Shown: positions 1-43,070, counted from the first letter of the stretch. The stretch: DNA of 64,000 bases from Selaginella moellendorffii (GCF_000143415.4 NW_003314261.1:971325-1035324), one strand, 5' to 3'. Notes: generated from the letters alone by a model not told the origin. Numbers and translations are program-made.

Positions 1-2976
1 GCAATCCTTCGTATATCCGGAACTTGGTTTGAACCACTCCACAGTTACATTGAAGGAGTTAGTTTCCGCGTCCTCCTTTGCATCAGTGATGCAGTGCCCC
101 ACCCATATCATTTGTTTTTTATTACTGGGTCTGACAAGCACGACCATTCCTTTGCAGACCTGTACTGGATTGAATGCTGAATCCGGCTTCTTGTTCCTCG
201 GCCCACAATAGTGATCCTCAACATCGTTATCTGTCACTGCATTTCCAGAGGACATTATTCCGCTACTATCTGGTGCTCTGGGTTCTGGCCAAAAGGACTC
301 TTCCAATTCTTCATATACAACCGGCCCATTTTGGATAGCAGATATAATCTTCTCCCAGTATTCGAGCAAAGGCTTGCACCTCTTAAAATAGGATTCTCCA
401 CCAAACACCAACCCCCTCTTCCAGAAGGCAATATGCTGTCTAATCCCGGCCACTATACTTTCCTGGTTTTTGAGTCCATCCGGGTGCATCGGCCGTGGGG
501 AACCCTGAGGAATCATAGGTTCCCCAGTTATGGGATCTCTCTTGAAGAGTTCAATGCCATCCACTGGCAGCCACACTGTGTCCCATTCTCTCATCTTGTA
601 CCTCATCACTGGAGCACCGTCACGCATGCTGAAATGAAACTGAAGAGGCTTGGAGTGGCCAATCAGCATTTCGAATCCGTCCCTGATGTAGCCTCTTACA
701 AACCCCTTAAAGTCTGGAACCTCTGTCACAAGTGCAGCTTCAACAGTGCCTTTGATGCAATTTTGGAATTCATCGTAGAGTTGTGGGAGGGTGAGGACAT
801 TGGATCGCCGGAGGGACTCTGCCAGGTGACTGAACATGGCATCGACGTCTTCATGAGTGTGCCCAACCATGAGAAAGCCAAGTGTAACCGTTTCAAATAT
901 GCCTTTGGCAACAAGCATCGCCAAGTACGCGAAGACGTACATGTTTTTGTTCTCACTGCCAGCATTGTCTGTTTGGAGCAGAAGATGGGGTGGAAGGCCA
1001 CATCGGCCGCAAGAACTTCCTTGAGATTCTGCTTCGTTTGGATGAGGCTGTGCATTCACCGGGCGACCAGCCTCGTCGGAATGGCATGAGGCCTCACGTG
1101 ATAACCCTACAATCTGACGGCCAACATATTCACTGGGATGGCATGGGGCCCCACACGATACTGCAAGCCTTTGCTCCTCCTCCAGCTGAACCCTGTATGG
1201 GGTTCGATCGACAAGGGCCTTATGCAAGGGTTGGCCGTTCAGCTCAGTCTGCGCACTTTGCAGAGACCTTAAATGTTTTACTAGGGACGCAATCATCATG
1301 TTTGCACCCCCGCCACCCCATAGAGGTACAAAGAAGTTCCCATAGTTCTGGGCACCATGCCCATGAGCGATTATGCCAAACAGAGACACAGGCAGCTGCA
1401 TGGATGAAGAGATTGCCTTGGGGGCAGGATTGAGTCGAGGTAAGCACGTCTTTTTCTGGTCCATTTTGTCGTGGATGATGCAGAGGTAAGAGTCAGGTCT
1501 CTCCATGGAGAGAATCCTGTTATGATAATATGCAGTCCTGCAGCTTCTCTGCTCGATGTTGTGGTCGAGCCGCCTTCTAACCAACGTCTCTCGCTCTTGA
1601 GCGCTGCAAGAATTCTTTGACAAAGCCATTTTGATAGCAGTGCACTCGTCACACTTTGAAAAGCTGGAGTACTTTCCTATACTCACATCCCTGAATCTGT
1701 TGCTCCACAATCTACTAAATCTAGATTGGCTCAGCTTTCTGTAGCCATTACTCTGGAGTTCCTGATTCACATCTTCCAATATGGCCCCCTTGGTATACAT
1801 GGAAGGGAGAACTCGTTGGGTGTCTCGTGTTCCATCTTCCAAGAGGCGGGTTTTATGTGGTTGCTGCTCGCTACATGTCTCGACAAACCTCTTGAAGATT
1901 GCCTCTCCATATACAACATGACACCTGGTTTTGTGCGTACCGTCGTTCCCATGGACTGCCTGTTGAACCCTTTGTTCCTCGAACTCAGTTTTGATTCTGT
2001 AGAATGTGGTTCGANNNNNNNNNNNNNNNNNNNNNNNNNNNNNNNNNNNNNNNNNNNNNNNNNNNNNNNNNNNNNNNNNNNNNNNNNNNNNNNNNNNNNN
2101 NNNNNNNNNNNNNNCCTTCATGCAGACCAAACCCCTCTGGAAGACCATGCCCCCCACCTGATGTTCTGAAGCATCAACAGATGACCGTAATGCCTCATAC
2201 ACAAAATTGCGAGCTGCCTTCCAGGACAATGTCTTGTATCTGCCTCTCTCTCTTTCAATAGCATCCCAATCAGCTTGTTGACAGCACCTCCTCTTGCAAC
2301 AAGCAACTGTCGAGACCATTCGAACCTCCATCGCCATTTTCTGCCTTTTCGGTTCGTTGCTCAGATCCCTTTGGCTGCGCTGTAGGAAGGTGTACTTTCT
2401 TTTCCCATGAAGAGATGTTCTGTCATCAGTTGTAGTGGTGTTTGATTGTGAATCCTTCACATTCTCAAACACTAAATGCCTCAATTTCCACCGCACAATG
2501 CTTCCAATAGTCAGACTGTTTTCTTCTGTGTCAACAACCTCTAAAATCGCAACTCCAATATCATCCCAGCCCAATTCTTGATTAGCAACCGCATCTCTTG
2601 GATCGACAACTGTGGCTAAGCCCTCAGCTACCACCTCCCCCTCGGGGTTGTTTAGAAACACCTTTGCCTGAATCCATGTAGCACGGTTCTTAAGATCCAT
2701 GGAGGGAACATGCGTCGCACTTGCGCTGTCCCTAACATCTACTTTCTTCTGCAGATTTTTCAAGGCAACAACAACATTTACCCCGACGACCATCTCTCCT
2801 CGTTCAATAGCGACCACATTCCCATCGAAGACGGTCTCTACTGATACAGCAGCATTGCCTTCCCCAAGCCTTTGACAGTGTATAACAAAGTTCCGATCCA
2901 TAGACACAAGGGTCCCTTTTGCAACTCTCTTCCCACCATTCAAAATGTAAACCTTTTCCCCAACCCTGAAGGCCAT
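1..2976 (-). CDS. Sola1-like (DUF7869-type) DDD transposase, 3' end outside window
   Basis: Manual translation from ATG 2976 (MAFRVGEKVYIL...) stays open across the 100-N gap to position 1. Motifs: CCKRRCC...VC, HGN, FSKCDEC, YLCIIHDKMDQKKTCLP, GIIAHGHG, LLLQTDNAGSENKN, FLMVGHTHEDVDAMFS. C-terminal GMVVLVRP..IWVG..VTVEWF segment. Confidence 0.85.
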   Translation of the reverse strand, partial: MAFRVGEKVYILNGGKRVAKGTLVSMDRNFVIHCQRLGEGNAAVSVETVFDGNVVAIERGEMVVGVNVVVALKNLQKKVDVRDSASATHVPSMDLKNRATWIQAKVFLNNPEGEVVAEGLATVVDPRDAVANQELGWDDIGVAILEVVDTEENSLTIGSIVRWKLRHLVFENVKDSQSNTTTTDDRTSLHGKRKYTFLQRSQRDLSNEPKRQKMAMEVRMVSTVACCKRRCCQQADWDAIERERGRYKTLSWKAARNFVYEALRSSVDASEHQVGGMVFQRGLVCMKXXXXXXXXXXXXXXXXXXXXXXXXXXXXXXXXXXRTTFYRIKTEFEEQRVQQAVHGNDGTHKTRCHVVYGEAIFKRFVETCSEQQPHKTRLLEDGTRDTQRVLPSMYTKGAILEDVNQELQSNGYRKLSQSRFSRLWSNRFRDVSIGKYSSFSKCDECTAIKMALSKNSCSAQERETLVRRRLDHNIEQRSCRTAYYHNRILSMERPDSYLCIIHDKMDQKKTCLPRLNPAPKAISSSMQLPVSLFGIIAHGHGAQNYGNFFVPLWGGGGANMMIASLVKHLRSLQSAQTELNGQPLHKALVDRTPYRVQLEEEQRLAVSCGAPCHPSEYVGRQIVGLSREASCHSDEAGRPVNAQPHPNEAESQGSSCGRCGLPPHLLLQTDNAGSENKNMYVFAYLAMLVAKGIFETVTLGFLMVGHTHEDVDAMFSHLAESLRRSNVLTLPQLYDEFQNCIKGTVEAALVTEVPDFKGFVRGYIRDGFEMLIGHSKPLQFHFSMRDGAPVMRYKMREWDTVWLPVDGIELFKRDPITGEPMIPQGSPRPMHPDGLKNQESIVAGIRQHIAFWKRGLVFGGESYFKRCKPLLEYWEKIISAIQNGPVVYEELEESFWPEPRAPDSSGIMSSGNAVTDNDVEDHYCGPRNKKPDSAFNPVQVCKGMVVLVRPSNKKQMIWVGHCITDAKEDAETNSFNVTVEWFKPSSGYTKDC
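2015..2114. other. Assembly gap (100 N) inside transposase ORF
   Basis: Run of n; the flanks are in the same reading frame (VCMK...RTTFYR). Confidence 0.99.
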
Positions 2977-3330
2977 TCTGAAAGTGCAGAAAAGAAGTTA
3001 AGACCATACAAAAAATGATTGGAGAATGGCCTAAATCATAACATACCAAATAGCATGAGGCCACATGCCATTATTCAAACATGCTATTGACACCCACGTG
3101 AAATTTCGCATTCACAAAATTGGCATGAGCCCTCATGCCATCTTGATATACACACAGCTGCAGGCAAGTAAAAACATACATGACAATACGCTAGCCATGA
3201 AATTGCAAGGGCCCAAGATGGCATGTGGCCTCATGCCATTTCTAAATGTGGTCCTAAACCATTCCATGGTGAACATACCAGGAAGCACAAGTGCCGAATA
3301 TCAAGAGGAAGCGGTAGCCACACCAAAGAC

Positions 3331-3470
3331 AGTGCCGCTCGCAACACCGCAACTACTCGTAGCGCCGCTCGCAACACCGCAACTGCTCGTAGCGCCGCTC
3401 GCACAAACTGCCACTCGCATAAACTGCTGCTCGCAATGCCGCAACCGCTTGTAGACGCAAAAACCACAGC
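3331..3470. repeat. Short tandem array (~30-bp unit GCGCCGCTCGCAACACCGCAACTRCTCGTA) upstream of transposase
   Basis: Two near-exact units plus degenerate copies visible. Confidence 0.8.
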
Positions 3471-4250
3471 TCACAACGCCGCTTACACAAGCAGCGCTCA
3501 CTGCGCTCAGTGGAACCAAGAACACGGCGCACAAAAATGATAGACCTAGGAATGAGTTCGAGAATTCAAAAATAACACACGCTTGAACGTCACATCAAAT
3601 CCTCTGACAAACCAGATCTTATGATTCCTCTGACAAATTTCAAACTGAGTAGCTTCTAGACTTTGCTGTCGGAGGTTGAACTTTGTCACATCATGTCCTT
3701 GCCTCGATTCAGCTGTGCCATGTCAGTGATTCGAACTTTCCCATGCCATATCAGCGATCCGCGCCAAGATTATTCGCCGTGTAAAGGAATAATTATGCTG
3801 TGTGTGTACGTCCATTTATGGCAATATAAGGCCATACGCCATTCAAAGAATAATGCTAGTCGAGCATTTTTTGGTGCATTTTTTGGTTCAAAATTGCATG
3901 AGCCCACACGCTATAAAGTTTACCTGTACCAAAAATAGAAATAGCTTTATTTACTTGGGAATTTAAGTGGTTGAGGCATTTTTAAACTTACAAACACATG
4001 CCCTACTTACATTCATTTGGTTGCTTAAAATTCAAAAATATTATAAACCTTTCTTTTTGCATTTTCAATGTTTTCAATTATGGTTTTTGATTTTCGCAGG
4101 ACCAGCCTAGTAATCTATTTGCATCCCGTCATGTTTATAGCTAGCTTTCGTTTGTCCCCTTCGCTAGCCTGAGATACATCTGCTCGGCATCTGCCTCTTA
4201 CAGCATTTGCCCAGAAAGGGCATCTTTCTTCACGCAGCATTTGCCACATG

Positions 4251-4275
4251 TTTAGGGTTAGGGTTTAGGGTTTAG
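4251..4275 (+). repeat. Telomere-like/telo-box motif TTTAGGG(TTAGGG)TTTAGGGTTTAG
   Basis: About 3.5 plant telomeric units in the region between the divergent genes. Confidence 0.6.
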
Positions 4276-5517
4276 CAATTCAGTAGCTTGATAAACATGC
4301 AAATACAGAACTTGATGCAAAATCCTTTGATATGTCACAATGCCCCTAGGACCATAAACACATTTCAATAGAGAGGGTCCTTTCATTTCATAACTCCTTA
4401 CGTAGATCTTGGTGAAACCAGAGTTAGTGAAGTTGGTTTTTTGTGATCCCGCATCTGATTGTGATGTCCCTTTGCAGTGTCGATGGAAAGGTCAATGCAC
4501 ACCAAACTGTAGAATCTTGGAGCAAAATAACGGTCGGATCTATGGCAAATGCCCCTGAAACATTGTAAGGCTCGTGTGGTCTCATGTGGTGTCCGATCGA
4601 GATGCTTCTTTGCAGGGTCATTAAGAAGGACATTGTATACCATTCTGTAAAATCTAGTTGCGATCTAACGGTTGGATCTCCAGGAAACTCAAAACAATCT
4701 CGCGCGTGTCAGAATATTCTAGGAATATACTCCTATGTGCTCCTGAAAATGGCATGCGGCCCCACGCCATTCAAGAGATAACGCCAGATGACGCCGAGCA
4801 TTTTTTGGTGCATTTTTTGGGATCAAAATTGCATGAGCCCACACGCTTGAACGTCACATCAAATCCTTTGACAATTTATTTAGCTGAACATCTGGCATTT
4901 TTGGAAATACAAGATGCTTTGGAATATCCAATCATGCATGGTATAAATATAGCGAGGGTATTAAATGATATCCCAATCATGATCTTTCTTTTGGATTTCG
5001 CGTGCATGCAGTCCGAGGAATGATGACGTTGCGGATTTCTTTTGGATTTCACGCATGCGCGTGCCGATCCAGAAATTAATGGTGGCGCCCAAGTCCGAGG
5101 AATGATGACGTGGCGGGATTACCAACCGTTGTGACATTTCGCGCGTGTGAGGTTAGGTTTTGCATTTTGCTTCGTACTCGCGCTCGCATACTCGCCCTCG
5201 CATCGCGCTCCCACTCGCGCTCCCACTTCTCTACAGGTTTCTCGTGTGCATCGGCGTCCACTCGCGCTTGCATCACACTCGGGCTCGCATCGCGCTCGTG
5301 TGCATCGGCGTCCACTTCAAGACACACCCAGTTTATAACTTCGCCGCCAACTCCGCCGCCCACTCTGCCACCCACACGCAGCCCACTTGGTGTCCCGGGA
5401 GATTTCAGCGCCACTCTCCAACTGTAAGTGGCAGAGTAGCCTTGCTGCTATGATCCGCTGCACACACAGTGCACATTCGCCAGCGAGTCCGGTTGTCACG
5501 CCTCCATTCGGCTTCAA

Positions 5518-8500
5518 ATGGTAAGTCTTTTAGGCCAAGTAGAAAATGGCATGAGGCCACATGCCATTCAGTAGCAACATTGGCATGCACCGATTGGGCT
5601 CTCGAGTGCAGTCCGGTTACAGATGGCGTGTAGCCTCACGCCATCTTAGGATGCAGCCTTAAGACATCTGATGCAGTGGTGAATGGCGTGTGGCCTCACG
5701 TTATTTCCAGCTGCTAGCTTTTCATCTGTCAGCTCTAATTGTTGTGCATTTCTGAATAGGCGAGGAATTGCGTTCTTCTTCCAGCCACTGTCAATGTGGA
5801 TGCAGAGAAGGGGGAGGAGCTCACCAGTTGGACTTTTGGGATGAAAGGCGAGGATCTGAGGCTGTACAACACAGATGGTGGGAGAAAAGAATGCATGGGG
5901 ATCCTCATCTAAGTGACAGACACTCCATGCAGTTCCATGCAAGAATATGGACTGGCACTTGTGGTAGAGACAGCGTCTGCCTTCAAGATCCACCTTGCAC
6001 ATCCTAGCGGCTTCCCGGAGGGGGGCAGCGGCTATGAGGAATTCCTAGAGGGAGCTAGGGAGAGGTTGTCCAGGAGGCCCACAATTTCAAAGACGCTGCG
6101 GGTCTATGAAGATCACATGGAATCCACGGACCTCACCTACGGCGATGTTCAAAAACTATATTCCAACATTGAGCCGTTGAGAGTGCCTCCAGTTTGCGAA
6201 GCGAAGGGGAAGGGGGTCGATCTGGAAACTACCCCGAAGCAGAAAAGGGTGGTCAAGCTCAAGCCGACGTCCGACTCTCCTCCAAAAAAGAAGCTACTCG
6301 GTGATGCCATTGCCTTGGGTTCGAACACTACACCCACCAAAAAGAAGAGCCGCAAAGAGTAGAAAGAGCAAGAAGAGGCAGCAAAAATCGTCGCAGATAA
6401 TAGTACTTGTTACTATTCCAACAAAGTATATACAATCGACGTGAGCCGTATCGACATCCAAAGCAAATACAACCACAGGCTAGTATCTGATGAGTGGGTG
6501 GAGAAACTGAAGCAGAAGATGCTGGCAAGTCCAGTAACACCCGACATCACAGACGTGATCCCCTACTACCGAACAATGAAGGGCGAGACGAGGTTTCTAG
6601 ACTTGATCAATAGGAAGGTGTTGGACGATCAGAACATCCGGTTCTATGCCGTCTCCGGGCAGCATTCTAGCTTGGCGATGCAAGAGATAGTTGTGGATAT
6701 TATGGTGGGTGAGGAGGTGAAGAAAGTTTTCAAGACAAGAGTTGTCCGCCTGATAAAAGGCAACTCGCCCCTCCGATCTATCATATACATTTCCCACGCG
6801 CAGAATGTCAAGCAAGAAACGTGCTACAAATCGGGTCTGCACGAGACATTGGCACAAACACGGAAGCTCTAGGTTCAACTGAAGAAGCCACAAAAACCAG
6901 GACAAGGACGTGCACTAGCAACTAGCGCCTGGCAGGTAAGCCTCGTTGCATGTGGCCTCACGCCATTTCCATTGCAGGAATTCTCGAGTCTTCTCTCAAA
7001 AACACTGGGAGTCAATGACACACTCAGCATCCATAACATTCTACTCGCGACAAAAGTTGTTTTTGACAAATGGGTAGATGTGCTGAGGAGGTACCATGAC
7101 AGAGAGTTGCCAAACTCAATGGGTGTGGAGGACGGCCGGAAGCCCAATGATTTGAAGCTCAACGCCTTGCGTTTCTCGCGGTCTCTAGACGACGACGACC
7201 TTTTGACAGTGGCTAATGCTCTTCTACGTGGTGAGGTAGTCTTCAACAAGACCAAAATGACTCCCGGCCATATTGTGACATACGAGGACTTGTGCACGAC
7301 TCTGAGAGCTCGTGCGCTATTGAAGGATTGGATCTTCGAGCAAGTGGCCGTGGAGAGGGTGAGCATCGACACCACGCAAGAGATGATGGAAGCGCTAGAT
7401 TTGTCAAATGAAGACATCGACGAGTACGTGAAGGGGGCCCCCAAGTTCATCGATCTGCTGCGGGATGCCACGAAAAGTAAAGCTGAGAAGTTGGATCAGT
7501 ATCCAAATTTCATTAAGATTGATGTCGACCGCCGGCTTCAGAAACAGCTCGACCCCGCAGCAGAGGCCTATCGAGAACCTTACCGGGTATACTTGAATTC
7601 GGATGAGGATCAAAGGTGGAGGAGCATCGTTTCCCGCGGAGATAAGCAGGTCAAGAACATCTTTTGTGTGATGGACTTTACAAACGAGGAGATCACTCAT
7701 GCAGACGAAATCAGCTCCATCATTGACTTAATGGTGGGACTTGCGGAGGTGGAATCTTCAGTCCACTATATGATCTACGACTTCGAATCCTATCACAAGT
7801 TCTGGAAGGCCTTGAACGAGGTGAAGGCTCGGTTGAAAGGCAAGGAGATGTGGGAGATCCATGGGATAATGGCTAAGAAGAAGATACCGACGAATGTCCG
7901 CATCTTCACATTCGCCCTTGTTATTGGTCCTGCAGCAGAGTGGGACTGGAGTGACTTCCCAGCTTCGTTCGACAAGGCCAATCGAATTGATCTGAGGGAG
8001 GTCAATTTACCCGTGCCTGAGGAACTGAAGACGGCTATGGAGCTTTCGAATCCAAAGAAAGCTCCAGGTGCAGCATGGGAAATGCTCAGCTGGGTCTTCA
8101 ACGCAATAGCGGGTGGGTCACCTGCTTCCGACTCCAAGGGCAAATGCGTTGTCGAGTACAACTGCGGTGGACTATTCTTTCAAGCCGCACTACTCAAGGG
8201 TGTCCCGTGTGTTGCGGTGACAAACTCCATTGAAGAGGTGACTTCAATGGAGCATATAATTACAGTTGCCAAAGAAAAATAGTATCTTCTCTGCGAACCT
8301 GGTGAGTACACACTTTAAGTTTAAATGTTATCTCACAAGCTCTGTATGCAAGAGCGTGGCCACCCCCAGATGCTGAAACGGCGTTAACAGCTACTGTTGA
8401 AGATACCCATGTTGGGCCGAGCTCACAACCTGTACAAGGTAAGGTCACGTGAGGCCTCACGCCATTTTGATTATAGATCATTGTGAATATTCAGACACGA

Positions 8501-9430
8501 GGACTGAAAAGCACACTGGTGGCGCATCGAAGAAGGACAAACAGACAAGCAATAGGAAAAAAGGAGGTACAAATTATATTTGCAATGGCGTGTGGTCTCA
8601 TGCCATTCCTTGCAGGAGACACTTCTTCAAAGGCAAAACAGGCAAGCACCAGCCAAGCTCAAACTGACAGTGGTCATAAAAAGTGAAAGCACGTTGGACA
8701 GTCGTCGAGATCAGAGGCATTTGATTCGAAAAGGAAGAAGGGCAACGAAAAGATGATAGGTAATGCCTCGCGGTTATGGCGTGTGTGCTCATGCCATTCA
8801 TTGCAGATCAAGGGCTGAGTGAAGCAGGCAGTCACCACCTCCTGACTTAGATTCCTATGGCGGACTCCCCTTCCCCAATCTCAATGGAGAGGTACAATGG
8901 ATGAGGGATGCTTTTCAAGTCAGGGCCACGTTTTTCTCATCTCGTCGTCTTCGAAGGGTGCAAGAACGTGCAAAAACCATGTTAAGACAGTCGGGTGAGG
9001 ATACGGTCCTAGGTCACGCACTAAAACAGGCTATGGATGTCTTGTATTTTGAGATGGAGACTCGGCCAGATGATTTTCCCAAGATGGTCCTGGAAGAACA
9101 AGCCATCCAGCCTGAGCAGCCTATGGAAGAAATGCAGGAGGGGGATGAGGAGCCAGAGAAAGATAATGAGCAGGAAGAGCAGAAGGACGAAGAGGAGGAC
9201 AAAGAAGAGGAGGACGAAGAAGAGGAGGACGAAGAGGACTTGGATGGTCCTCACAATGGTGACGATCACAATAACGATGACGACGATGATGACGACGATG
9301 GCCAGCCTGAGGTGGCCAAAGAGCAGCGGAGGAAGGTCATACAAGACAAACCATCAGGTAAATAATAGTACATCCATTCCTAACCTTTTACCATTTCTAA
9401 CATTGTCCATGTAGGTCGCAGAGCAAATGG
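5518..9430 (+). pseudogene. Transposon cargo gene: ParB-like N-terminal domain + degenerate beta-class N6/N4 DNA methyltransferase-like fold + acidic tail; at least 4 premature stops
   Basis: ATG 5518, intron 5521-5759, then one frame through ORFs 5913-6362, 6441-6872 and 6972-8282, broken by TAA 5910, TAG 6360, TAG 6870 and TAG 8280. ParB-like IDIQSKYNHRLVSDEWVEKLKQKM...FYAVSGQHSSLAM...ISHAQN. MTase-like EMLSWVFNAIAGG..GKCVVEYNCGG.FFQAALLKGVPCVAV. Mini-introns 6936-6977, 8439-8476, 8567-8615, 8760-8806. The 3' exon structure is uncertain. Confidence 0.65.
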
Positions 9431-10239
9431 TAAGTAGAGATTATTCAGTTGAATTTACAAACTCTAGCCTTTAGTGTCGAGGAAGGATAGTGCCAAGCAA
9501 GGGTCGAAACGTATGTCCAATCCTTCAGAATCAGCAGTGCGCCCAAGTGATATCGGTCATAGTTCCTCAATAGCAGTTGATGGTAAATACAGTATAGTCG
9601 ATTCAATGTGCTAATGAGTTTGTTTTTAGTAGCACGGGAGGATACCATCTCAATCGAAGGGAGATATTTGGACATGCATATGGATCCACCAGTGGACTCT
9701 ACTTGCCTACAAGAGTCATCAGAGCTGGTGGAGGCTACTATCCATATCAACGCCAAGCAAGCTGACCACGCTCCACTTGATGCTGCCCATACCACTAAGT
9801 CAATCTTGTCCACGTATCCAACTGACGGTGACTAGGCGCCATTGGACCCGCATGAGGCCGCCCCAGCCGCCGAGCCGGTCGTATCCTCATTTCCAACGGA
9901 CTCAACGTGTGCCCAATCGTCTGACTACGCGCCGTTGGAACCTCCCTACACCGCCCCTGCTGCCTGTTCGGTCATGTCCACTTTGCCAACGGAGGCACCA
10001 ACTGAAATGGCGTGTGATCACACGTCATCGGAACCACCCCATGCCACTGTTGAGCCAGTTGTACCAGAGTCTACAGCTGAAATGGCATGTGCCCACACGC
10101 CATCGGATGCGATTGACCCCACATTGTAGAGGAGAGTATTTCCGCCCTTCACGTTTCCTCGACCAAAACCCTCTCAACGACCATCGGGAGCACCATTCGC
10201 TAATATTGTAGATGGTAAAATTGACTTGTACCATTTTTT

Positions 10240-11124
10240 ATGCTGACGCATTTCATTTCAGAGTCACGGCGAAGGTACTGTATCATTTTTGATCTGAACG
10301 GTGTCCTTTTCTCCCATGAGCGTGGCTCGTCCTCGAATGTCATTGCACCCTCCAAAGCCTGCAGTCGCAAGTTGGTCAAAAGAGACAGATTCACATTAAT
10401 CACACGGGAGAAACTGCGGGATCTAATAATGACTATGCGACACTTAAAACAGAGGGCCGGGTTCAATTTGCAATTGGGAGTTTGGACATCCATGATGCGC
10501 CACAATGCATTAACGTTGCTACAGATGATGCACGATCAGATGCGAGTAATATTACCATTTGACTTTCTCCTAACGCAGGAGGATTGCTTGACTATGGTCC
10601 ATGTGAGGGGTAGCAAGCCCATCTTTGTCAAGCCAGAGGCTGTAGTGATGAACCGGACTGCTAGGTCAAGTGAAATCCTCATCATCGATGACTCGCCGAT
10701 TAAAACTGCAACGAACACGCATACATATGCAGTGCACCCCATCTCTTGCAGTATGGAAACTAGGGAGAAGAAACCGTATGTTCTGGGGGACCTTGCAAAA
10801 CGGCTTGGAGCGATGGTGATAGAGAACCGGCCAGTCCAGGAGGTGGCTGCAGAAATCAACCAAATGGCAGATGGAACGGTATATCAGAAGCTATTTGATC
10901 GGACAGACACCAGTCATCATTTATGGCATGTATATTGTCTAGCCAAGCACTATCCGCATCTCCATAATCTGCTCAACCGGATGGGTTCTTTGACCACTGA
11001 ACATGAGCGTGGACGTATTAGAGAAGAGATGGCATTACTATTGGGTTTAAATCCTGATAGTGTGGAGAGTGATGAAATTCCAAGATTATTGTATAGGCGT
11101 TGGAGGCAAAAAATAATAGTCTGA
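10240..11124 (+). CDS. FCP1/NIF-like HAD-superfamily phosphatase domain (terminal exon; upstream exons uncertain)
   Basis: IIFDLNGVL (motif I, DxN variant), GVWTS, LLTQEDC, FVKP, ILIIDDSPIK..N...AVHP. Splice acceptor tttcag at ~10261. Confidence 0.8.
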   Translation: MLTHFISESRRRYCIIFDLNGVLFSHERGSSSNVIAPSKACSRKLVKRDRFTLITREKLRDLIMTMRHLKQRAGFNLQLGVWTSMMRHNALTLLQMMHDQMRVILPFDFLLTQEDCLTMVHVRGSKPIFVKPEAVVMNRTARSSEILIIDDSPIKTATNTHTYAVHPISCSMETREKKPYVLGDLAKRLGAMVIENRPVQEVAAEINQMADGTVYQKLFDRTDTSHHLWHVYCLAKHYPHLHNLLNRMGSLTTEHERGRIREEMALLLGLNPDSVESDEIPRLLYRRWRQKIIV

Positions 11125-11524
11125 GATGGCATGTATTTATTTAAAAATGTAACTTATTATGGCATGGGGTTCCATGCCATTGTATTAATATTAAAAGACA
11201 ATTCTTTGAGAGGATTTGCATTATACTAGAAGTGTTACAGCATGTTATTGGAAGTCTACAAAGTTGTTTTATTAATAAGGGGAAAGTAAAGATTGAATGG
11301 GGACTTGGGCTCCACCTAGACTTGGAGCAATTGAGCCAATATTAAAAGGATGGAAAGAAATTAGACGACGATGACAAGGAGAAGAGAGAGGTGAAGCAGT
11401 GGCAGGGGGAGGAGAAGTGATTGAGTAGACATTTCCTTGTTTAAAATAAAATGGCATGTGCCTCAATGCAGTTGAATTTTGTTATATTTATATACTATAT
11501 AAAGGTTTGGAAACCTTATTTTAC

Positions 11525-11565
11525 AAGTGGGATAATGACAATTCCCACTTTAACGAAATAGAGCT
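11525..11565. repeat. Right terminal inverted repeat of the large transposon
   Basis: Reverse complement GCTCTATTTCGTTAAAGTGGGAATTGTCATTATCCCACTT versus MITE end GCTTTATTTCGTTAAAGTGGGACTTTTCATTATCCCACTT. Confidence 0.85.
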
Positions 11566-12037
11566 TAAGAGAAATTAATCTGAAAAGTGATGTTCCCACT
11601 AGAACATCCTAATTTCCCACCATCTAACCATGACTCAAGTTGAGGTAAACAACTTGTGTTTACATAACCATCTTCGTGCCACCACATCTAGATTTTATTT
11701 GCATTTGCCTCATGTTCTTCTTCAAAGGATGCAACTTGCCATTATTTATAGAATTCCTTAAACACTAATTAAAACTCTAGTTTGATAAGGTGGTAATATT
11801 GGTTTAGGTTTGAGTCTAGTGGAACTTATAAGTCCTTTCATGACCTTTTAAGGGTTGACCATTCCTAAAAAGTACTCAAACACCATTCCAGTTCACAAGC
11901 TTATCAATTCACTTTAGCACAATATTGGAGAGAAACTTCCAAAATACGAAATGCTCAAAGAACGAGCACGAAGCAAGCAATAAGTGAGTCTCTAAAAAAG
12001 GGACACAAGAGGACCAACACATGATATGTGGAGGAGT

Positions 12038-12430
12038 CCGAGATGGACCTGATATGGAGTCCAAGATGGAGTCCAAGATGGACCTAAGATGGAGTCTGAG
12101 ATGGACCCAAGATGGACCTAAGATGGAGTCTGAGATGGACCCAAGATGGAGTTCAAGATGGAGTTCAAGATGGACCCAAGATGGAGTCCAAGATGGACTG
12201 ACGTGGAGTTCAAGATGGAGTTTCAGATAGACCCGAGATGGAGTCCGAAGTGGTGTCTGAGATGGACCTGAGATGGAGTCCAAGATGGACCCGAGATGGA
12301 GTCTAAGATGGAGTCCGAGATAGACCCCCGAAATGGAGTCTGAGATGGAGTCCGAGATAGAGTCCGAGATGGAGTTTGAGATGGACCCGAGATGGAGTCT
12401 AAGATGGATATCCAAAAGTATAGTAGGGAG
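12038..12430. repeat. Degenerate 10-12-bp tandem array (GATGGAGTCCAA / GATGGACCCAA) within a TE-like relic
   Basis: About 30 units visible; followed by CCAAAAGTATAGTAGGGA, also found inverted at 24835-24852. Confidence 0.85.
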
Positions 12431-12664
12431 AGTGTGGAGGTTGCCCAGTGGAGCTAGTTTGGCCAAGAAAGGCTAGTGTGACCCAGAAAGGCTATGCCCA
12501 CGTGTTGGATGATGATATATTTACTGAGGAGTCTAAAGTCAGATGTAAGCAACCAAAGGGAACGACTCGAGAGACGATCCATGGGGTTCAAATATAGAGG
12601 GAAAGGGCCCATGAACAAGAGTGCACCCCCTTTTCCAATCGGTTAAGGGTCTTGGGATAGTTGG

Positions 12665-19092: not shown

Positions 19093-19848
19093 CTACCTGG
19101 GAGAGACGGTGATGTTGCCAGCGTCCACCACTAGCTTCCCATTCCTGAATTCGCTCACGGCAGCCAGCGGCCACACAAATCCCTTCCATATCAAGCTCGT
19201 CGCCAGCGGCACATCGATGATGATCTCCTTTTGCGTGGGCTTGGCCTCAGTGCTGACAGCGATCAAGTAGCTCCGCCCAACCCATCCAATCCATCCCGCG
19301 ATGTAGAGGAAGATGAGCCCCGGATAGACGAACTCGCCCAGGTGCTGCTGATCGCCATCGACGATGAGATGGGGCAATCCATCCGCGCCACACAAGAGCC
19401 CAGCATCGCCATAGAACTTGAATCGCCGCTTGGTCTTCTCGATCGTGGCATTGATCGCCAGCGCCGGCGCGCTATCGTCGGCGTAGAGCTTGAGCCGCGA
19501 CTGGAGCTTCTTGATCTCCTTCTTCTCGCGCTTAGCAAAGGCCGCGGAATCCTTGCACTTGGTGAGGCCGGCTACATCCGCTGCTGCCTCGGGCGGCGCC
19601 GCCACGATTGGAGCGCTGCCGATGATCGCCGCCGCCGCCAGCGCAGCCGCCATTCTACCAGCATTGGATCTGGCCGCCTGCTGCTCACCCGAGGTGGAGG
19701 AAGCTTGGACGAGGAGAGACTTGGATCTCTTGGCGCTGCCGCTGCTGCCTCGAGGGGGCAATGCCAAACCCGAGAATGTGGAGCGCGAGGAGACATCCAT
19801 GGCGGGGTTCTTCAAGCTGGAGAGGGCGACGGACGATGCTGCAGCCAT
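19093..19848 (-). CDS. PSAF: Photosystem I reaction centre subunit III precursor (PsaF), single exon
   Basis: Transit peptide, then [19 protein letters not shown]...[53 protein letters not shown]...NITVSPR. Confidence 0.97.
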
Positions 19849-24600: not shown

Positions 24601-24820
24601 AGGGTGAAGACCAATGAGCTGCAAGGTACTCAAGTGGGGCACCACTCCACATGAGCCAAGAGCACTATAATTGATTTCCCTTCCAAGAGTGGGAGTTGCT
24701 CTTTAGGTGGCTTTTTTAGAACCACATGAGTCCATATTCACTCCCACCTAAGGCCCTTAAGCCCTAATCTCAACCTTAAGTCAATTTGGAAGCACTAAAG
24801 AATTCCTTCAAAACTAATTC

Positions 24821-25200
24821 TTGGACCTCACTATCCCTACTATACTTTTGGGACCCCCCGCCCCCCCTATTGGGAGACAATATACTTTGGGATTTCACTC
24901 TATGACTTGTATTAGTCTTGGACTTGATTTTAGCTCTATCTTAGACTCGATTTTGAACTCGATCTCGGACTCGACCTCGGACTCAACTTCGGACTTGGTC
25001 TTAAACTCAATCTCGGACTTGACTTTGGACTTTGTCTTGGACTCGATCTTAGATTCGATCTTGGATCTCGAACTCAGTCTTGAACTCGGTCTCAGATTTA
25101 GTTTCAAACTCAGTCTCAGAGTTGGTCTTGAATTCAATCTCAAACTCAATTTCGAATTTGGTCTCAAAGTCGATCTCAAACTCGATTTTAAACTCGGTTT
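24821..25200 (-). repeat. Inverted relative of the 12038-12430 tandem array (GACTCGATCTTG units)
   Basis: 12-bp periodic units plus shared flank TCCCTACTATACTTTTGG. Confidence 0.75.
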
Positions 25201-25647
25201 CATCCAATGAACTCTTTATCATTTTGGTCGTGCTTTTGGGGATCCTTCAGCCTACAACACCTCAGGGAATTGGTTCTTTAGAAGGATAATATAAGGTCTA
25301 TAAATACATATATGTATATAGATGTATTACTTTGCTTAAGTAATATGCTAATTAAAGTACTATAATATATAAACTGTCCATTTGAGACTGAATTTATATA
25401 AGTAGGGTTCTAAACTTTAATTAATATATCTATTTCTATATCTTGAGTATTTATATAGAAATTTTTAAAAAATTTTAGAAAACTAAAAATGAAATAGTGA
25501 ACACTTTAAACTTAAAAAATATTTATAAAATTATAATTATTATAATATTTATATACTATATTATGCATATGGTACATTTCAAGACTGATAAAACTTAAAA
25601 CTGATAATCTATTTAAATTTTTAATATATATTAATACCTAAATTTTA

Positions 25648-32263: not shown

Positions 32264-32494
32264 TTCATCGTCGTCTCCAAGGGAAAGCAATCGCAGCCGT
32301 CGGTAGACTTAAAGAATCTGACGTCTCAAGGTCAATGCGATTGCTTTGTGGTTCATGTTATTCTTTTGTATTTTTAAAAGTATTTCAATAGAAATACCAA
32401 AAAAAATTCATTATGAAAAAAATTACATATCCCAAAGAAAAAAATTAAAAAATGTGAATTAAATGTCAAAACAATTCTTCAACTTATCAAATAT

Positions 32495-37552: not shown

Positions 37553-37960
37553 GTACAAAAATAAAATTAGATTAAGTACAAAAGTATATCTCTATATACT
37601 TATTTATATAGTGTATATAGTTACCAAATGTTAAATTGAAATGAAAAATATTATAAAAATAATAAATAAATAAATAAATAAATATTACCTTTCTGATATT
37701 TACTTTGTTATATTTTATTATTTGAAAAATTTCATTTTGTATAACACAAATGCCTTCTATTGGTCATCATGGTTGCAAAAGCAAAAATGAAAAAATATAA
37801 AAAAAACACAAAACAAACAATACTTATATAGCTATGACAACTTTAAGTCACACACTTAAAAATAATAGTCATGTGCTAATTTGTTTTAGCATTTTTTACT
37901 CTTGCACAAGTACATATATAAATGTTTACAAAAATCAAATTAAAAAGTTATTATTAAATG

Positions 37961-37964
<4 letters not shown>

Positions 37965-38010
<46 letters not shown>

Positions 38011-38144
38011 CACACACATACTCTTTTTCTTAGTATATTTAAATAAGTATATCCTTTCACTTTCTACTCATTTAAAAGCAAAGAACAATAAAAATATAAT
38101 TATAGAAATTGTTAAAAAAGTGTGTGTGTGTGTGCGTGCGTGTA

Positions 38145-38179
<35 letters not shown>

Positions 38180-38180: not shown

Positions 38181-38186
38181 TATGTA

Positions 38187-40890: not shown

Positions 40891-43070
40891 TTATGTATCT
40901 ATCCACATCCTCAAAGAAGATACATCCACTCCAATTCTTGAGGCACACCACCTCCTCTTCTCTTTTGCCAGTTGAGTCGACAATGGTGATACTTGCTGTG
41001 TGCTCGCTTGAACAAAGTTGACGGACATAAAAACGAGCGAGTCATGAACAGGAACCACAATGTGCTCCTGTTCCTTGGGCCTGTCCATGCAGAAGTTGAT
41101 GATGAAAACCTGTGCTGAATGCTAATCATGGTAAAGAAGCGCCCTCGTCATGTGCTCGCTTATTTGTGCCATAGTACCGTTTGCAACAATCTCCACTGCA
41201 AACTTGGAGAAGTTGGTACCGTCGTGAATAAGAGAGTCACAGCGCATCCCAGACCGCCTCTGATCTGGCACAATCTCCTCCTTGACTTCAGGTAGAACTG
41301 TCGCTGGAATGCAAGGATAAGCGTGCTTCAATATGGCCTTCATGCTGCATAGAAAGAGGAACTGGTGCATGTATTCGGAGCACTCGGGCCTGCACATAAC
41401 TTCTCCGTCCAGGTTCTTGATGGCCTGAAGAAGCAGCCAGACGCGGTCCAGTCAAGTAGCACAAGGAGGTGCATCCACGTCGTCGCAGAGGGTAGTGCAC
41501 CTCCGGAGCATAGCAGTCCGAAGCAGTGGCGTTGAAATGCATACATAATATGTTTCTGCCCCACTTTCCTCATCGTCACTGTCCCAATCTGTAACTGCGA
41601 GCACCCCGTGTGCAATAAAATCGCGGAGTTGCACCAGCGTCTCGGGTCCGCAATATAGACCTGGAATCTCCAGGTACCGAATCAGCAGCTTGCACGCCTT
41701 GATATCTTGCTCCTGTTTCCGTATAAAGCCGAGAATCCTATTGTATGTAGCCTGTCCGTATGTAAGCTCCCAGGTGATACGACTCTGCTCGCCGGAGCCA
41801 GCGCCTGAACGTCCAGAGCTCCTCCTGAACAAGGTAAGCTAGGCAAGTGCCTGTGAGGCCCTTGTGACCGCCAGTCCACTGCATTATCGACGCTGCAATG
41901 CTGTCCACCTCGATGGCCACACTTGGATGATCCGCTGCTGCCTGTTGTAATGCTTTATTTCGTTAAAGTGGGACTTTTCATTATCCCACTTATGGTGTGT
42001 GGCCACATGCCATTTTTATAATAACAATAAAAAATTGAAGTTTTAATTTTATAATTTATAAATTAAAAACTTTTCATATGATTTTGTGTTATAATATTGT
42101 GAAATATAAAAAAATAAATTAAAAAACTGATAGAAATATTAATAAATATTAATTAAGTACTAGGAAATGGCATGTGGACACATGCTAATTAATGTCCCAC
42201 TTTACTGAATAAGTCCCACTTTAACGAAATAAAGCATTGTAACAGTTCCCTCACGTGTTCCAGAGTGAACCTTGAGGATGCCAGGACATGGTCGTGCGGA
42301 AAGGGAGACAGATGACTTGAAGTAGAACTTGGCATATGCGTGCGCTCAGTCCTTGCTGCATGATTGTTGTATTGTGCTTCAAGAAGATCCTTTACAGTCT
42401 CCACCCCAACAAGCAGGAAGCCGTGCAAGTTGTACGCATCCTTGTCGCTCTTGATGCTTCTGATGGTGGCAAAGAACTCGTGCACGATGTCCGACGGTAT
42501 GTTCAGCAGAGAATCTGCCTCGTCGAGGATGACAGTCACCAGTGTTTGCAGCTTGCTCCTTACGAAGAGCGACTTGAAGACGAGAGGTGTATAGCATGGT
42601 AGCTGCTGCTTGGGGAAGAGAGTGGGACACTTCAAGGTGAGGGTGTCACAGATATAGCCCCAAAAGTCATGGCTGCTCCAACTCATCCTCGCACCCTCCA
42701 GTCCATCCAGGTAGATCAAAGTTGCTTCGGACTGTAACGTGAGCTTCCTCCGAGCTGCCAGCACCATTGTCGACTTTCCACTCTGTCGAGGGCCACACAG
42801 CACGCAGTACTTGCCCTGCGCCAGGTCAGATACCAGGTCGACCATGTCGGGGGTGATATAGTAATTCGACACTGGATCGACTGCAAGCCCAGCTGCAAAT
42901 CGTCGCTTTGGACGTGACTCATTTCCAGCCTGAACCGTGTAATCGAGAGGTGGAGCGAGCTTGAAGTCTCTCGCCAGAATGATTTCCCCTGCCCTGGATT
43001 CCAGCATCAGTATATCACAACTCGTTTCGATCTCCCTCGAGATCCTCCACGCCCACCTCTTTTGTGTGCA
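40891..43070 (-). pseudogene. Crinkler-like P-loop NTPase + PD-(D/E)xK nuclease gene, disrupted by MITE, frameshift and stops
   Basis: Walker A CGPRQSGKST, Walker B VILDEAD, WTGGHKGL, C-terminal VLPEVK..RCDSLIHDG..FAVEIVA...EHMTRA..Y. Removing the MITE restores ELLQQAAADHP. Frameshift at ~41760, TGA at 41452, TAG at 41122. Confidence 0.75.
41951..42236. mobile_element. 286-bp MITE, non-autonomous derivative of the large transposon at 1-11565
   Basis: Perfect 26-bp TIR TGCTTTATTTCGTTAAAGTGGGACTT; 6-bp TSD TTGTAA (41945-41950 / 42237-42242); subterminal palindrome copies at 41992 and 42167. Confidence 0.95.

What the first reader, a model, noticed from the sequence alone, without database searches (positions are those of the whole stretch)
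1..11565. Giant Sola1-like transposon with ParB-like/MTase-like and FCP1-phosphatase cargo
Seen: an intact DDD transposase, a divergent ParB-like + methyltransferase-fold gene and a HAD phosphatase, all bounded by a TIR shared with a MITE and all marked by the same 22-bp palindrome. Known: Sola elements are usually described as transposase-only; ParB-MTase fusions are typical of phages and plasmids; FCP1-family enzymes dephosphorylate the Pol II CTD. Inference: this is a multi-gene plant DNA transposon whose accessory proteins could recognise its own DNA and manipulate chromatin or transcription, possibly an undescribed system.
Basis: partly seen in the sequence, partly recalled or inferred. 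Interest (0 to 1): 0.92.

Follow-up and report, generated by a model that had tools for sequence, protein, structure and literature searches.

The report
Three-gene Sola1 transposon in Selaginella
This is a real but partly decayed copy of a large Sola1 "jumping gene" in the clubmoss Selaginella that carries, besides its transposase, a methyltransferase-like gene, a phosphatase gene and about 18 copies of its own 22-base palindrome; the same layout occurs in a liverwort, and a related two-gene version was already reported in a brown alga.

Summary
Window 1-11565 is the larger part of one Sola1 DNA transposon of Selaginella moellendorffii (scaffold GL377565.1). It has a transposase on the minus strand (Pfam DUF7869, E 6e-43), which runs off the window start. 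It has a divergent second gene (ORF2) whose C-terminal half folds like beta-class N6A/N4C DNA methyltransferases. It has a downstream NIF-type HAD phosphatase exon and a terminal sequence shared with both ends of a MITE at 41951-42236. A 22-bp palindrome occurs 18 times in the element, twice in the MITE and nowhere else in the window (0.6 expected).

In a 97%-identical copy the assembly gap is about 25 nt and in frame. That copy also shows the missing transposase-side terminus.

Two diverged Riccia sorocarpa elements have the same gene order and their own 22-bp palindrome (57 and 37 copies). The accessory genes are therefore conserved parts of the family, not chance cargo.

The ParB-like call could not be verified. 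The methyltransferase catalytic motif is degenerate, the phosphatase motif is atypical, and ORF2 of this copy has three in-frame stops.

The system is not undescribed. A Sola1 element with a ParB-plus-methyltransferase gene on the opposite strand was reported in Ectocarpus in 2025. This is a new variant of a known kind.

The parts
1..2976 (-). Sola1 transposase gene. The ATG is at 2976-2974 and the C-terminus lies beyond the window start. Conserved acidic residues are at codons 1470-1468 and 1461-1459 (HDKMD), 969-967 (TDN) and 843-841 (HEDVD). The N-terminal roughly 80 codons (2726-2967) are absent from copy L002.
   Evidence: Open frame. DUF7869 at E 6e-43. 117 homologues. Alignment A5 with invariant D182/D185 and near-invariant D349/D391. 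Motif match to Sola1-1_Ec32.
2015..2114 (.). Assembly gap inside the transposase gene. The real content is about 25 nt and is in frame.
   Evidence: L002 positions 815-839 bridge window 2115 to 2014, and the ORF P0006 reads through.
2977..5517 (.). Region between the two divergent genes. It holds five palindrome copies (3050, 3120, 3218, 3893, 4749), an internal duplication and a short telomere-like run at 4251-4274.
5518..8310 (+). ORF2, the accessory gene, transcribed away from the transposase. The start is uncertain and the copy is a pseudogene, with in-frame TAG stops at 6360-6362, 6870-6872 and 8280-8282. The 6870 stop replaces a Trp that is conserved in Selaginella P0001 and in Riccia.
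6420..6700 (+). N-terminal conserved domain of ORF2, with the motif FYAVSGQHSS (FLAISGQHSS in Riccia).
   Evidence: tblastn to Riccia at E 1e-9. Alignment A4. No family hit apart from phrog_1033 at E 0.21. The model failed.
6978..7500 (+). Helical middle domain of ORF2. It is the best-modelled part, with pLDDT about 80-90.
7560..8279 (+). Methyltransferase-like domain of ORF2. The motif IV position is VMDFTNEE (Asp at 7674-7676, no PPY). The motif I-like stretch VVEYNCGG is at 8148-8171.
   Evidence: Foldseek against PDB and BFVD. Profile hit to M.RsrI. The Riccia homologue hits PF01555 at E 1.2e-3.
6936..6977 (+). A 42-nt GT-AG segment that holds one palindrome. It lies at an intron position shared with Selaginella P0001 and Riccia ORF2.
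8311..10260 (+). Unresolved stretch between ORF2 and the phosphatase exon. It holds short open segments, an acidic low-complexity ORF (8823-9362), three GT-AG mini-segments that each carry one palindrome (8439-8476, 8567-8615, 8760-8806), and two palindromes read in frame (10007, 10082).
10261..11124 (+). NIF-type HAD phosphatase exon. It follows an AG acceptor and has no upstream in-frame ATG, so it is probably spliced to upstream exons. Motif I reads FDLNG, with Asp at 10291-10293 and Asn at 10297-10299.
   Evidence: Pfam NIF at E 3.8e-5. Alignment with the Riccia NIF ORFs.
11125..11566 (+). Right subterminal region and terminus. It has palindromes at 11159 and 11451, an 8-bp inverted pair AAGTGGGA...TCCCACTT, and the terminal sequence at 11544-11564.
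   Evidence: The same end follows the transposase in L002.
41951..42236 (.). A 286-bp non-autonomous relative (MITE) with the same termini and one palindrome next to each end. It is inserted in an AAA_22 ORF.

Best explanation
Shown: positions 1-11565 are the right-hand roughly 90% of one copy of a young, multi-copy Sola1-superfamily cut-and-paste transposon of Selaginella moellendorffii. The family has three conserved coding parts:
- a DDD-type transposase;
- a divergently transcribed accessory gene (ORF2) with a conserved N-terminal domain, a helical middle domain and a C-terminal domain with the fold of beta-class N6-adenine/N4-cytosine DNA methyltransferases;
- a NIF/SCP-type HAD phosphatase domain encoded just downstream on the same strand as ORF2.

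The family also has an element-specific 22-bp palindrome scattered through introns, untranslated and intergenic parts, tolerant coding linkers and the subterminal regions. This copy is decaying, because ORF2 has three nonsense codons.

Inferred: the palindrome is a dimeric binding site for an element-encoded DNA-binding protein. ORF2 is the better candidate for the many internal copies. The transposase may bind the subterminal copies that the MITE keeps. Binding would mark the whole element as 'self'. The methyltransferase-like and phosphatase domains would then act locally on DNA, chromatin or the transcription machinery, to control the element's own expression or to avoid silencing. The methyltransferase lacks the PPY catalytic motif and the phosphatase lacks the second Asp, so either may work as a binding module rather than as an enzyme.
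For: Identity:
- DUF7869 at E 6e-43.
- 28 of 53 identical residues with the curated Sola1-1_Ec32 catalytic core.
- The terminal sequence is shared with both ends of a MITE and follows the transposase in the 97%-identical copy L002.
- Removing the MITE extends the interrupted AAA_22 ORF from 301 to 354 aa through the junction.

Conserved architecture:
- Riccia L003 and L005 both have NIF, then ORF2, then the transposase on the opposite strand. Their ORF2 proteins are only 55-63% identical to each other.
- Supporting scores: tblastn E 1e-9 to 1e-10 between the window and Riccia ORF2, and Pfam NIF at E 4.9e-13 for the Riccia ORF.

Palindromes:
- 18+2 copies in the window against 0.6 expected.
- 57 and 37 copies of a different 22-bp palindrome, confined to the two Riccia elements, against 0 expected.

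Methyltransferase fold:
- The AlphaFold model of the window protein (pLDDT 65.8) gives beta-class DNA methyltransferases as the top 21 PDB hits and most of the top 38 (E down to 3e-4, prob 1.0). It also hits phage and giant-virus N4/N6 methylases.
- The profile hits M.RsrI over the HPxxKP...FxGxG region.
- PF01555 at E 1.2e-3 for the L005 exon.

[quoted passage not shown] Red-algal Plavaka elements have inverted-repeat arrays next to a ParB-domain gene.
Against: - The left end and target-site duplication of this copy are outside the window.
- The N-terminal domain of ORF2 gave no significant match to ParB in any library, and its model failed.
- The methyltransferase model has only moderate confidence in the catalytic half (pLDDT about 45-60). 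Motif IV keeps only the Asp.
- The window and Riccia NIF domains are too diverged to match each other by BLASTP.
- Nothing here shows which protein binds the palindrome, or whether any of the proteins is active.
- The gene structure between 8311 and 10260 is unresolved.
- The conserved layout rests on three elements from two species.
Confidence: 0.75

Rival explanations
1. The palindromes are transposase-binding sites only, like the subterminal repeats of CACTA or Ac elements. ORF2 would have no part in recognising them. The internal copies would be spill-over or would help synapsis.
For: The MITE carries no gene and keeps exactly one palindrome next to each terminus. This is what a cis-requirement for transposition looks like. 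The transposases of this lineage have an extra N-terminal domain (DUF8039) that could bind DNA.
Against: Classical transposase-binding repeats cluster within a few hundred bp of the ends. Here most copies lie kilobases inside, often as tandem arrays in introns of ORF2. The deletion copy L002 has no palindrome in the last roughly 140 nt before its terminus.
Confidence: 0.3
2. ORF2 and the phosphatase are host genes picked up by the transposon (Pack-type cargo) and have no function for the element.
For: A solo ORF2-like gene (P0001) sits among ordinary Selaginella genes, with no transposase, NIF gene or palindromes nearby. NIF phosphatases are common host genes. ORF2 of this copy is already broken.
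Against: The same two genes, in the same order and orientation relative to the transposase, occur in a lycophyte and in two diverged liverwort families. A ParB-plus-methyltransferase gene occupies the same position in a brown-algal Sola1. ORF2 has almost no relatives outside such contexts in 1.8 billion representative proteins.
Confidence: 0.07
3. The palindromes are tiny selfish insertions, or act at the RNA level (introner-like units that supply or sit next to splice sites), and are not protein-binding sites.
For: Four copies lie in 38-49-nt segments with GT...AG ends and a conserved CCATT-YYTGCAG tail. One of these sits at an intron position conserved in Selaginella P0001 and Riccia.
Against: None of the 52 kb outside the element and its MITE has a copy, so they do not spread through the genome. 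Many lie in intergenic and subterminal DNA, or are read in frame (1081, 1138, 10007, 10082). Riccia has a different palindrome of the same length that is likewise confined to its elements.
Confidence: 0.1
4. The region is a chance juxtaposition or mis-assembly of unrelated repeats, not one element.
For: There is an assembly gap at 2015-2114, and the left end is not in the window.
Against: An independent copy bridges the gap in frame. One palindrome family runs through the whole span and stops at the terminus. The layout is reproduced in another species.
Confidence: 0.02

Closest known systems
Sola1-1_Ec32 of Ectocarpus (Genome Biol 2025, PMC12477816)
   Same: It is a Sola1 transposase with the same catalytic-core motifs (DN..ENKN...MVGHTH...D). 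It is a large element (21.5 kb) with TIRs and a 4-bp TSD. [quoted passage not shown] The authors proposed that it binds and modifies its own transposon.
   Different: The host is a brown alga, not a land plant. No phosphatase gene and no dispersed palindrome are mentioned. I could not compare the accessory proteins directly, because that sequence is not in the held supplements. In the window the methyltransferase motif IV is degenerate and the ParB part is unverified.
Plavaka accessory genes PAG2/PAG3 of the red alga Bostrychia (bioRxiv 10.1101/2025.02.11.637652)
   Same: They belong to a giant DNA transposon that carries DNA-methylase-domain and ParB-domain accessory genes. Tandem arrays of inverted repeats lie next to the ParB gene and were proposed as its binding sites.
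   Different: The transposase superfamily is different (Plavaka/KDZ-like). ParB is fused to a 2OG oxygenase and the methylase to a SET domain. The repeats lie next to one gene rather than across the whole element.
Bacterial and phage ParB-methyltransferase fusions and beta-class N6_N4 methyltransferases (CcrM, M.RsrI, M.PvuII; PF01555)
   Same: The domain order is the same, with motif IV before motif I. The HPxxK(P/R) and FxGG motifs are clearest in the Riccia copies. These proteins are the best structural matches.
   Different: ORF2 has no (D/N/S)PP(Y/F/W) motif and a one-residue-shorter glycine loop. It scores below the Pfam threshold. It is a eukaryotic gene with introns and sits inside a transposon.
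Sola1 elements of Physcomitrella (Repbase Sola1-1_PPa; reviews PMC10741241, PMC9033089)
   Same: The transposase family is the same (DUF7869 proteins of Physcomitrium are among the hits). A DDD transposase and 4-bp TSD are described, with sizes up to more than 15 kb.
   Different: The moss-type transposases fall in a separate, long-branch clade. The one moss locus examined (Ceratodon, L004) has neither ORF2, nor NIF, nor palindromes.
Two-gene plant transposons (CACTA TnpA/TnpD, PIF/Harbinger Myb-like ORF2, VANDAL VANC)
   Same: An accessory protein encoded beside the transposase recognises short repeated motifs in its own element. In VANDAL it counteracts silencing.
   Different: The proteins are unrelated. 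The motifs there are subterminal or short, not 22-bp palindromes spread through introns.

Membership tests
Sola1 superfamily | Transposase homologous to curated Sola1 transposases | tested here: met
   DUF7869 at E 6e-43. 28 of 53 residues are identical to the Sola1-1_Ec32 catalytic core read from the supplement of PMC12477816. That element's best BLAST hit is Repbase Sola1-1_PPa.
Sola1 superfamily | DDD catalytic residues | tested here: met
   Acidic residues are conserved across 10 homologues: invariant D182/D185 (HDKMD), near-invariant D349 (DN) and D391 (HEDxD). The assignment rests on conservation, not on a structure.
Sola1 superfamily | Terminal inverted repeats at both ends | tested here: inconclusive
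   The right end is present, and both ends of the related MITE match it. The left end of this copy is outside the window. A 97% copy (L002) shows the same terminus after the transposase.
Sola1 superfamily | 4-bp target-site duplication | tested here: inconclusive
   The MITE flanks fit a duplication of 2 (GT), 4 (TGTA) or 6 (TTGTAA) bp, depending on where the element is taken to end. No empty site is available.
ParB/Srx N-terminal domain | Significant sequence or profile match to ParB families | tested here: not met
   Pfam, NCBIfam and PADLOC gave no hit, and neither phmmer nor a profile search against PDB sequences gave a ParB hit. The only hint is phrog_1033 'ParB-like partition protein' at E 0.21.
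ParB/Srx N-terminal domain | ParB/Srx fold | tested here: inconclusive
   The AlphaFold model of 6363-6869 failed (pLDDT 34.7). The model of the later part aligns over about 500 columns with a phage protein named ParB/Sulfiredoxin (E 1.4e-3, TM 0.24).
ParB/Srx N-terminal domain | GxxR-type arginine motif | tested here: not met
   The conserved motif is SGQHSS in Selaginella and Riccia, with no Arg at the expected place.
Beta-class N6_N4 DNA methyltransferase (PF01555) | Methyltransferase fold with permuted motif order | tested here: met
   Foldseek against PDB gives CcrM, M.BceJIV, M1.HpyAVI, RsrI, PvuII and MboIIA at E 3e-4 to 1e-2, prob 1.0, target TM 0.4-0.65. BFVD gives the same kind of hit. 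The model confidence is moderate.
Beta-class N6_N4 DNA methyltransferase (PF01555) | SAM-binding motif I (FxGxG) preceded by HPxxKP | tested here: inconclusive
   In Riccia the motifs are recognisable: HPVSKR...VFDFFSGG, aligned to M.RsrI at E 0.38, and PF01555 at E 1.2e-3. In the window they are degenerate (NPKKAP...VVEYNCGG), with one residue fewer in the loop.
Beta-class N6_N4 DNA methyltransferase (PF01555) | Catalytic motif IV (D/N/S)PP(Y/F/W) | tested here: not met
   Only the Asp is conserved: VMDFTNEE (window), YLDLTHPF (Riccia), IADLRRCQ (P0001).
Beta-class N6_N4 DNA methyltransferase (PF01555) | Score above Pfam's gathering threshold | tested here: not met
   The best member scores 19.3 bits against a cut-off of 26.7. 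The window piece gives no hit.
NIF / FCP1-SCP HAD phosphatases (PF03031) | Score above Pfam's gathering threshold | tested here: met
   The window scores 23.9 bits against 21.8. Riccia L003 scores 49.5 bits, E 4.9e-13.
NIF / FCP1-SCP HAD phosphatases (PF03031) | DxDx(T/V) nucleophile and acid motif | tested here: not met
   The window has DLNGV. Riccia has DIEGL and DVEGL. The first Asp is kept and the second is Asn or Glu.
FCP1 proper (Pol II CTD phosphatase) | FCP1-specific insertion and BRCT domain | tested here: not met
   No BRCT or other domain was found on the 299-aa piece. Only the bare NIF domain is present.

The most novel reading that the evidence does not exclude
The land-plant branch of Sola1 carries a self-recognition module. 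In this reading a ParB-derived domain of ORF2 binds the element-specific 22-bp palindromes, which act like parS sites and co-evolve with the protein. The palindromes are strewn through the element and kept in mini-introns. Binding would nucleate a complex over the whole transposon. The attached methyltransferase-like and CTD-phosphatase-like domains would then mark the DNA or reprogramme RNA polymerase locally, shielding the element from the plant's silencing machinery.
Probability: 0.2. Interest if true: 0.85.

Novelty: new variant of a known kind. Interest (0 to 1): 0.6.

Why it matters
Transposon-encoded ParB-plus-methyltransferase proteins were proposed only recently, from algae, as a way for an element to bind and epigenetically mark itself. 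Nothing about their DNA targets is known.

The Selaginella and Riccia elements supply what that idea lacked:
- an obvious candidate cis-site, of the same length but different sequence in the two lineages;
- a natural non-autonomous derivative that keeps only the ends plus two sites;
- a third conserved partner, a NIF-type phosphatase, which points towards the transcription machinery.

This makes the hypothesis directly testable in land plants that have genomes and, for liverworts, genetic tools. It also matters for annotation. These ORFs can be mistaken for host genes, and one ORF2-like gene in Selaginella (P0001) may be a domesticated copy.

Tried and rejected
- Word-indexed homologue search with the 469-aa ORF2 piece found nothing. 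The profile version returned only its own member.
- The exhaustive HMMER search gave five weak hits, of which only Selaginella P0001 had usable context.
- tblastn of the Riccia methyltransferase exon against phage genomes found nothing.
- phmmer of ORF2 and NIF pieces against PDB sequences found nothing useful.
- Rfam on the whole window found nothing.
- Exact look-ups of the window's HAD ORF and of a paralogous transposase (P0135), meant to reach other Selaginella copies, were not on record. A within-genome census was therefore not possible.
- Bao et al. 2009, the paper that defined Sola, is not held. The Sola1 assignment was made through the Ectocarpus supplement instead.
- I tried to read the palindromes at 1081 and 1138 as mini-introns of the transposase. 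Rejected: splicing them would create an in-frame stop, and an annotated paralogue reads through them.
- I tried to chain exons across 8311-10260 by hand. Abandoned: this copy is too decayed to decide.
- I considered building a ParB alignment from plasmid and phage records for a profile-profile test. I left it out as too costly for a result that would probably stay ambiguous with only three ORF2 lineages.

Full report
WHAT IS THERE

The window is plant nuclear DNA. An exact protein look-up of the PsaF gene at 19096-19848 (-), and the locus fetched with it, place the window on Selaginella moellendorffii scaffold GL377565.1. That locus is 100% identical to window 29848-9093, so window position 1 corresponds to about record position 971,325.

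Within 1-11565 the minus strand is open for 999 codons from 2997 down to position 1, with a plausible ATG at 2976. The part downstream of the gap hits Pfam DUF7869 at E 6e-43. On the plus strand there is one long frame from 5913 to 8279, interrupted by TAG codons at 6360 and 6870 and ended by a third TAG at 8280. It is followed by a patchwork of short open stretches and then by an exon at 10261-11121 that hits Pfam NIF (E 3.8e-5, above the gathering score).

THE ASSEMBLY GAP

The closest database relative of the transposase is P0006, 96% identical. It lies on a 3.6-kb contig from another Selaginella data set (L002). L002 aligns at 97% to window 2725-2115 and 2014-769. It joins the two sides of the gap through 25 nt, and the reading frame continues. 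The bridging residues align with homologues from other species. The sides of the gap are therefore continuous and in frame. The gap is shorter than the 100 N that are written.

ENDS AND THE MITE

The sequence CCCACTTTAACGAAATARAGC occurs three times in 64 kb: at 11544-11564 and, inverted, at both ends of a 286-bp AT-rich element at 41951-42236. That small element interrupts an ORF with an AAA_22 domain. Removing it together with one copy of the flanking repeat extends the ORF from 301 to 354 residues through the junction. It is therefore a true insertion of a non-autonomous relative.

Its flanks fit a target duplication of 2, 4 (TGTA) or 6 bp, so the 4 bp expected for Sola is possible but not proven. 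The left end of the large copy lies outside the window. In L002, however, a copy that has lost the 3' part of the transposase, the same terminal sequence follows the transposase and is followed by unrelated LINE sequence. The family therefore does have this terminus on the transposase side.

THE PALINDROME

The pattern ATGGCRTG-N6-CAYGCCAT, allowing up to three mismatches, has 20 matches in the window. Eighteen lie between 1081 and 11472 and two lie next to the ends of the MITE. Shuffles give a mean of 0.62.

The copies are distributed as follows:
- Eight lie around the divergent gene starts. Five are in the intergenic region and three are in the first putative intron of ORF2.
- Four each occupy a 38-49-nt segment with GT...AG ends and a conserved CCATT-YYTGCAG tail: 6936-6977, 8439-8476, 8567-8615 and 8760-8806.
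- Two lie in a variable linker of the transposase.
- Two lie in a low-complexity coding-like stretch.
- Two lie in the right subterminal region.

The segment 6936-6977 sits exactly where Selaginella P0001 has an intron, and where Riccia has an intron filled with six palindromes.

WHICH SUPERFAMILY

All 117 relatives of the transposase carry DUF7869. The named ones are from Physcomitrium, Ceratodon and Riccia. Sola elements are described as DDD transposons with 4-bp duplications, 2-9 kb long and sometimes more than 15 kb, and are known from Physcomitrella (PMC10741241).

The supplement of the Ectocarpus transposon paper (PMC12477816) prints the curated Sola1-1_Ec32 transposase. Its core stretch (VQVDN...ENKN...MVGHTH...D...FS) matches the window sequence at 28 of 53 positions. 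That element's best BLAST hit is Repbase Sola1-1_PPa. In the alignment of ten homologues the acidic residues of HDKMD, DN and HEDxD are invariant or nearly so. I therefore accept the Sola1 assignment.

THE SECOND GENE

Direct searches were almost empty, and the five weak hits needed context. The best hit, P0001, is a Selaginella gene among ordinary host genes. Its N-terminus aligns across the window's stop at 6870, where it and Riccia have Trp. The stretch 6363-8279 is therefore one gene with a nonsense mutation.

The informative step was to fetch the genomic surroundings of the Riccia sorocarpa transposases. In L003 a 990-aa gene with no Pfam domain lies head-to-head with the transposase. Its exons match the window's N-terminal piece (E 1e-9; both have ...SGQHSS...) and the middle piece (E 2e-9 to 2e-10). 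Its last exon ends with HPVSKR...VFDFFSGGIFAREALLNGRDVV. This reads like the HPxxKP and FxGxG motifs of beta-class N6/N4 DNA methyltransferases.

Four results agree on the methyltransferase fold:
- A profile of the family finds M.RsrI over exactly this region. This is weak on its own, at E 0.38, and is one of only three PDB hits.
- One Riccia exon hits PF01555 at E 1.2e-3, below threshold.
- The AlphaFold model of the window's own sequence has pLDDT 65.8, high in the helical half and about 45-60 in most of the catalytic half. In the PDB its best hits are CcrM, M.BceJIV, M1.HpyAVI, M.RsrI, M.PvuII, M.MboIIA and the rotifer N4-cytosine methyltransferase, at E down to 3e-4 and probability 1.0.
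- In the viral structure library it finds phage and giant-virus N4/N6 methylases.

The fold call is therefore supported. The catalytic motif is not. At the motif IV position only the Asp is conserved (VMDFTNEE, YLDLTHPF, IADLRRCQ).

The N-terminal 'ParB-like' domain could not be confirmed. There were no hits in Pfam, NCBIfam or PADLOC, and none to ParB with a PDB profile. One PHROG 'ParB-like partition protein' hit had E 0.21, and the model failed. The only further hint is a long, poor structural alignment to a phage protein named ParB/Sulfiredoxin.

THE THIRD GENE AND THE CONSERVED LAYOUT

Just downstream of Riccia ORF2, on the same strand, an ORF hits NIF at E 4.9e-13. A second Riccia locus (L005) belongs to a diverged family. 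Its ORF2 is 55-63% identical to that of L003 and the DNA is about 68-70% identical. It has the same order: NIF, ORF2, then the transposase on the other strand. The window has the mirror image of exactly this.

The phosphatase motif I is DLNG in the window and DIEG/DVEG in Riccia, not DxDx(T/V). No BRCT or other FCP1 feature is present. 'NIF-type HAD domain' is accurate and 'FCP1' is not. Neither NIF exon has its own start codon, so the phosphatase may be the C-terminal part of the ORF2 protein. I could not decide this.

Both Riccia elements are also filled with a 22-bp palindrome of their own (GCTTCGGGACGCGTCCCGAAGC and variants). There are 57 copies in L003 and 37 in L005, often in tandem arrays inside introns. 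All lie within the element span and none in the flanks, against zero expected.

More distant Sola1 loci, Ceratodon L004 and a metagenomic contig L006, have a transposase only, with no ORF2, NIF or palindromes. In the transposase tree they fall in a separate clade on a long branch with 100/100 support.

HOW IT LIKELY WORKS

Shown: this is a cut-and-paste element with a conserved set of three coding parts and a conserved cis feature. That feature keeps its length and symmetry but changes its sequence between lineages.

Inferred: a 22-bp perfect dyad is the classic footprint of a dimeric DNA-binding protein. Its confinement to the element and its lineage-specific sequence point to a reader encoded by the element itself. 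ORF2 is the better candidate for the internal copies. The published Ectocarpus and Bostrychia cases make the same argument for ParB-domain proteins and nearby inverted repeats. The MITE, which keeps one copy beside each end, shows that the site may also, or instead, serve the transposase. I give roughly 0.45 to ORF2, 0.3 to the transposase and the rest to both or neither. The methyltransferase-like and phosphatase domains lack canonical catalytic residues, so binding or scaffold roles are as likely as enzymatic ones.

STATE OF THIS COPY

The visible transposase frame is open. ORF2 has three TAG stops, and the one at 6870 is a TGG-to-TAG change. The region from 8311 to 10260 cannot be assembled into a clean gene. 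Other copies are 97-98% identical, so the family is young. This copy probably depends on others.

COMPARISON AND NOVELTY

The closest known thing is Sola1-1_Ec32, which has the same superfamily, a large size, and a ParB-plus-methyltransferase gene on the opposite strand. As far as my searches reach, the new points are:
- presence in land plants;
- the NIF phosphatase as a third conserved part;
- the dense, element-wide, lineage-specific palindrome, partly housed in mini-introns;
- a solo ORF2-like host gene in Selaginella.

I rate it a new variant of a known kind.

Noticed in passing
window 41951-42242 and 41500-43094 (-): The MITE related to the Sola1 element is inserted in an ORF with an AAA_22 ATPase domain. 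Removing the MITE and one flank repeat extends the ORF from 301 to 354 aa through the junction.
   Followed up: yes
L001 10001-11425 (Selaginella GL377575.1): P0001 is a 451-aa relative of the ORF2 middle and methyltransferase-like domains. It lies among ordinary host genes (ArfGap, VQ) with no transposase, NIF gene, N-terminal domain or palindromes nearby. It may be a domesticated or relic copy.
   Followed up: partly
L002 204 versus window 2726-2967: The 97% copy has an in-frame 243-nt deletion that removes the N-terminal part of the transposase, which aligns with the DUF8039-bearing N-termini of relatives. It also has a later frameshift and has lost everything from window 768 to near the terminus. 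It is inserted in a LINE reverse-transcriptase sequence.
   Followed up: partly
window 3575-3612, 3864-3914 and 4799-4875: There is an internal duplication or rearrangement in the region between the two divergent genes. Two blocks that are contiguous at 4799-4875 occur separately, and in the opposite order, about 1 kb upstream.
   Followed up: no
window 4251-4274: A short plant telomere-like run (TTTAGGG-type units, about three copies) lies inside the element's intergenic region.
   Followed up: no
window 12028-12444: A tandem array of 11/12- and 23-nt units (GAGATGGAGTCC / AAGATGGACCC type) lies about 460 bp beyond the transposon end. A similar peptide-like repeat appears near 24818-25207.
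   Followed up: no
window 19096-19848 (-), 26613-27758 (+), 31562-32308 (-): Host genes lie close to the element: an intronless PsaF (Pfam E 2.6e-81), a bHLH gene and a PPR gene. The element therefore sits in gene-bearing DNA.
   Followed up: partly
window 44698-49423: A degenerate Ty3/gypsy-type retroelement (RVT_1 at 46868-47374) lies between two 114-nt arms that are 96% complementary (44698-44811 and 49310-49423). This is an odd arrangement for LTRs.
   Followed up: no
window 35308-40331: A series of long inverted repeats (arms up to 307 nt, 72-87% complementary) forms a roughly 5-kb foldback-like structure. Related segments occur near 57-58 kb.
   Followed up: no
P0003, P0004, P0005 and their clusters (short ENA, JGI and Logan contigs): Proteins from unidentified organisms share the ORF2 helical middle domain and the Asp-containing strand. 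ORF2-like proteins therefore exist outside land plants, but the contigs were too short or not retrievable.
   Followed up: partly
L003 5277-5279: The Riccia L003 ORF2 also has an in-frame stop, where L005 has Gln, inside the N-terminal conserved domain. That copy may be decaying as well, despite its 990-aa gene model.
   Followed up: no
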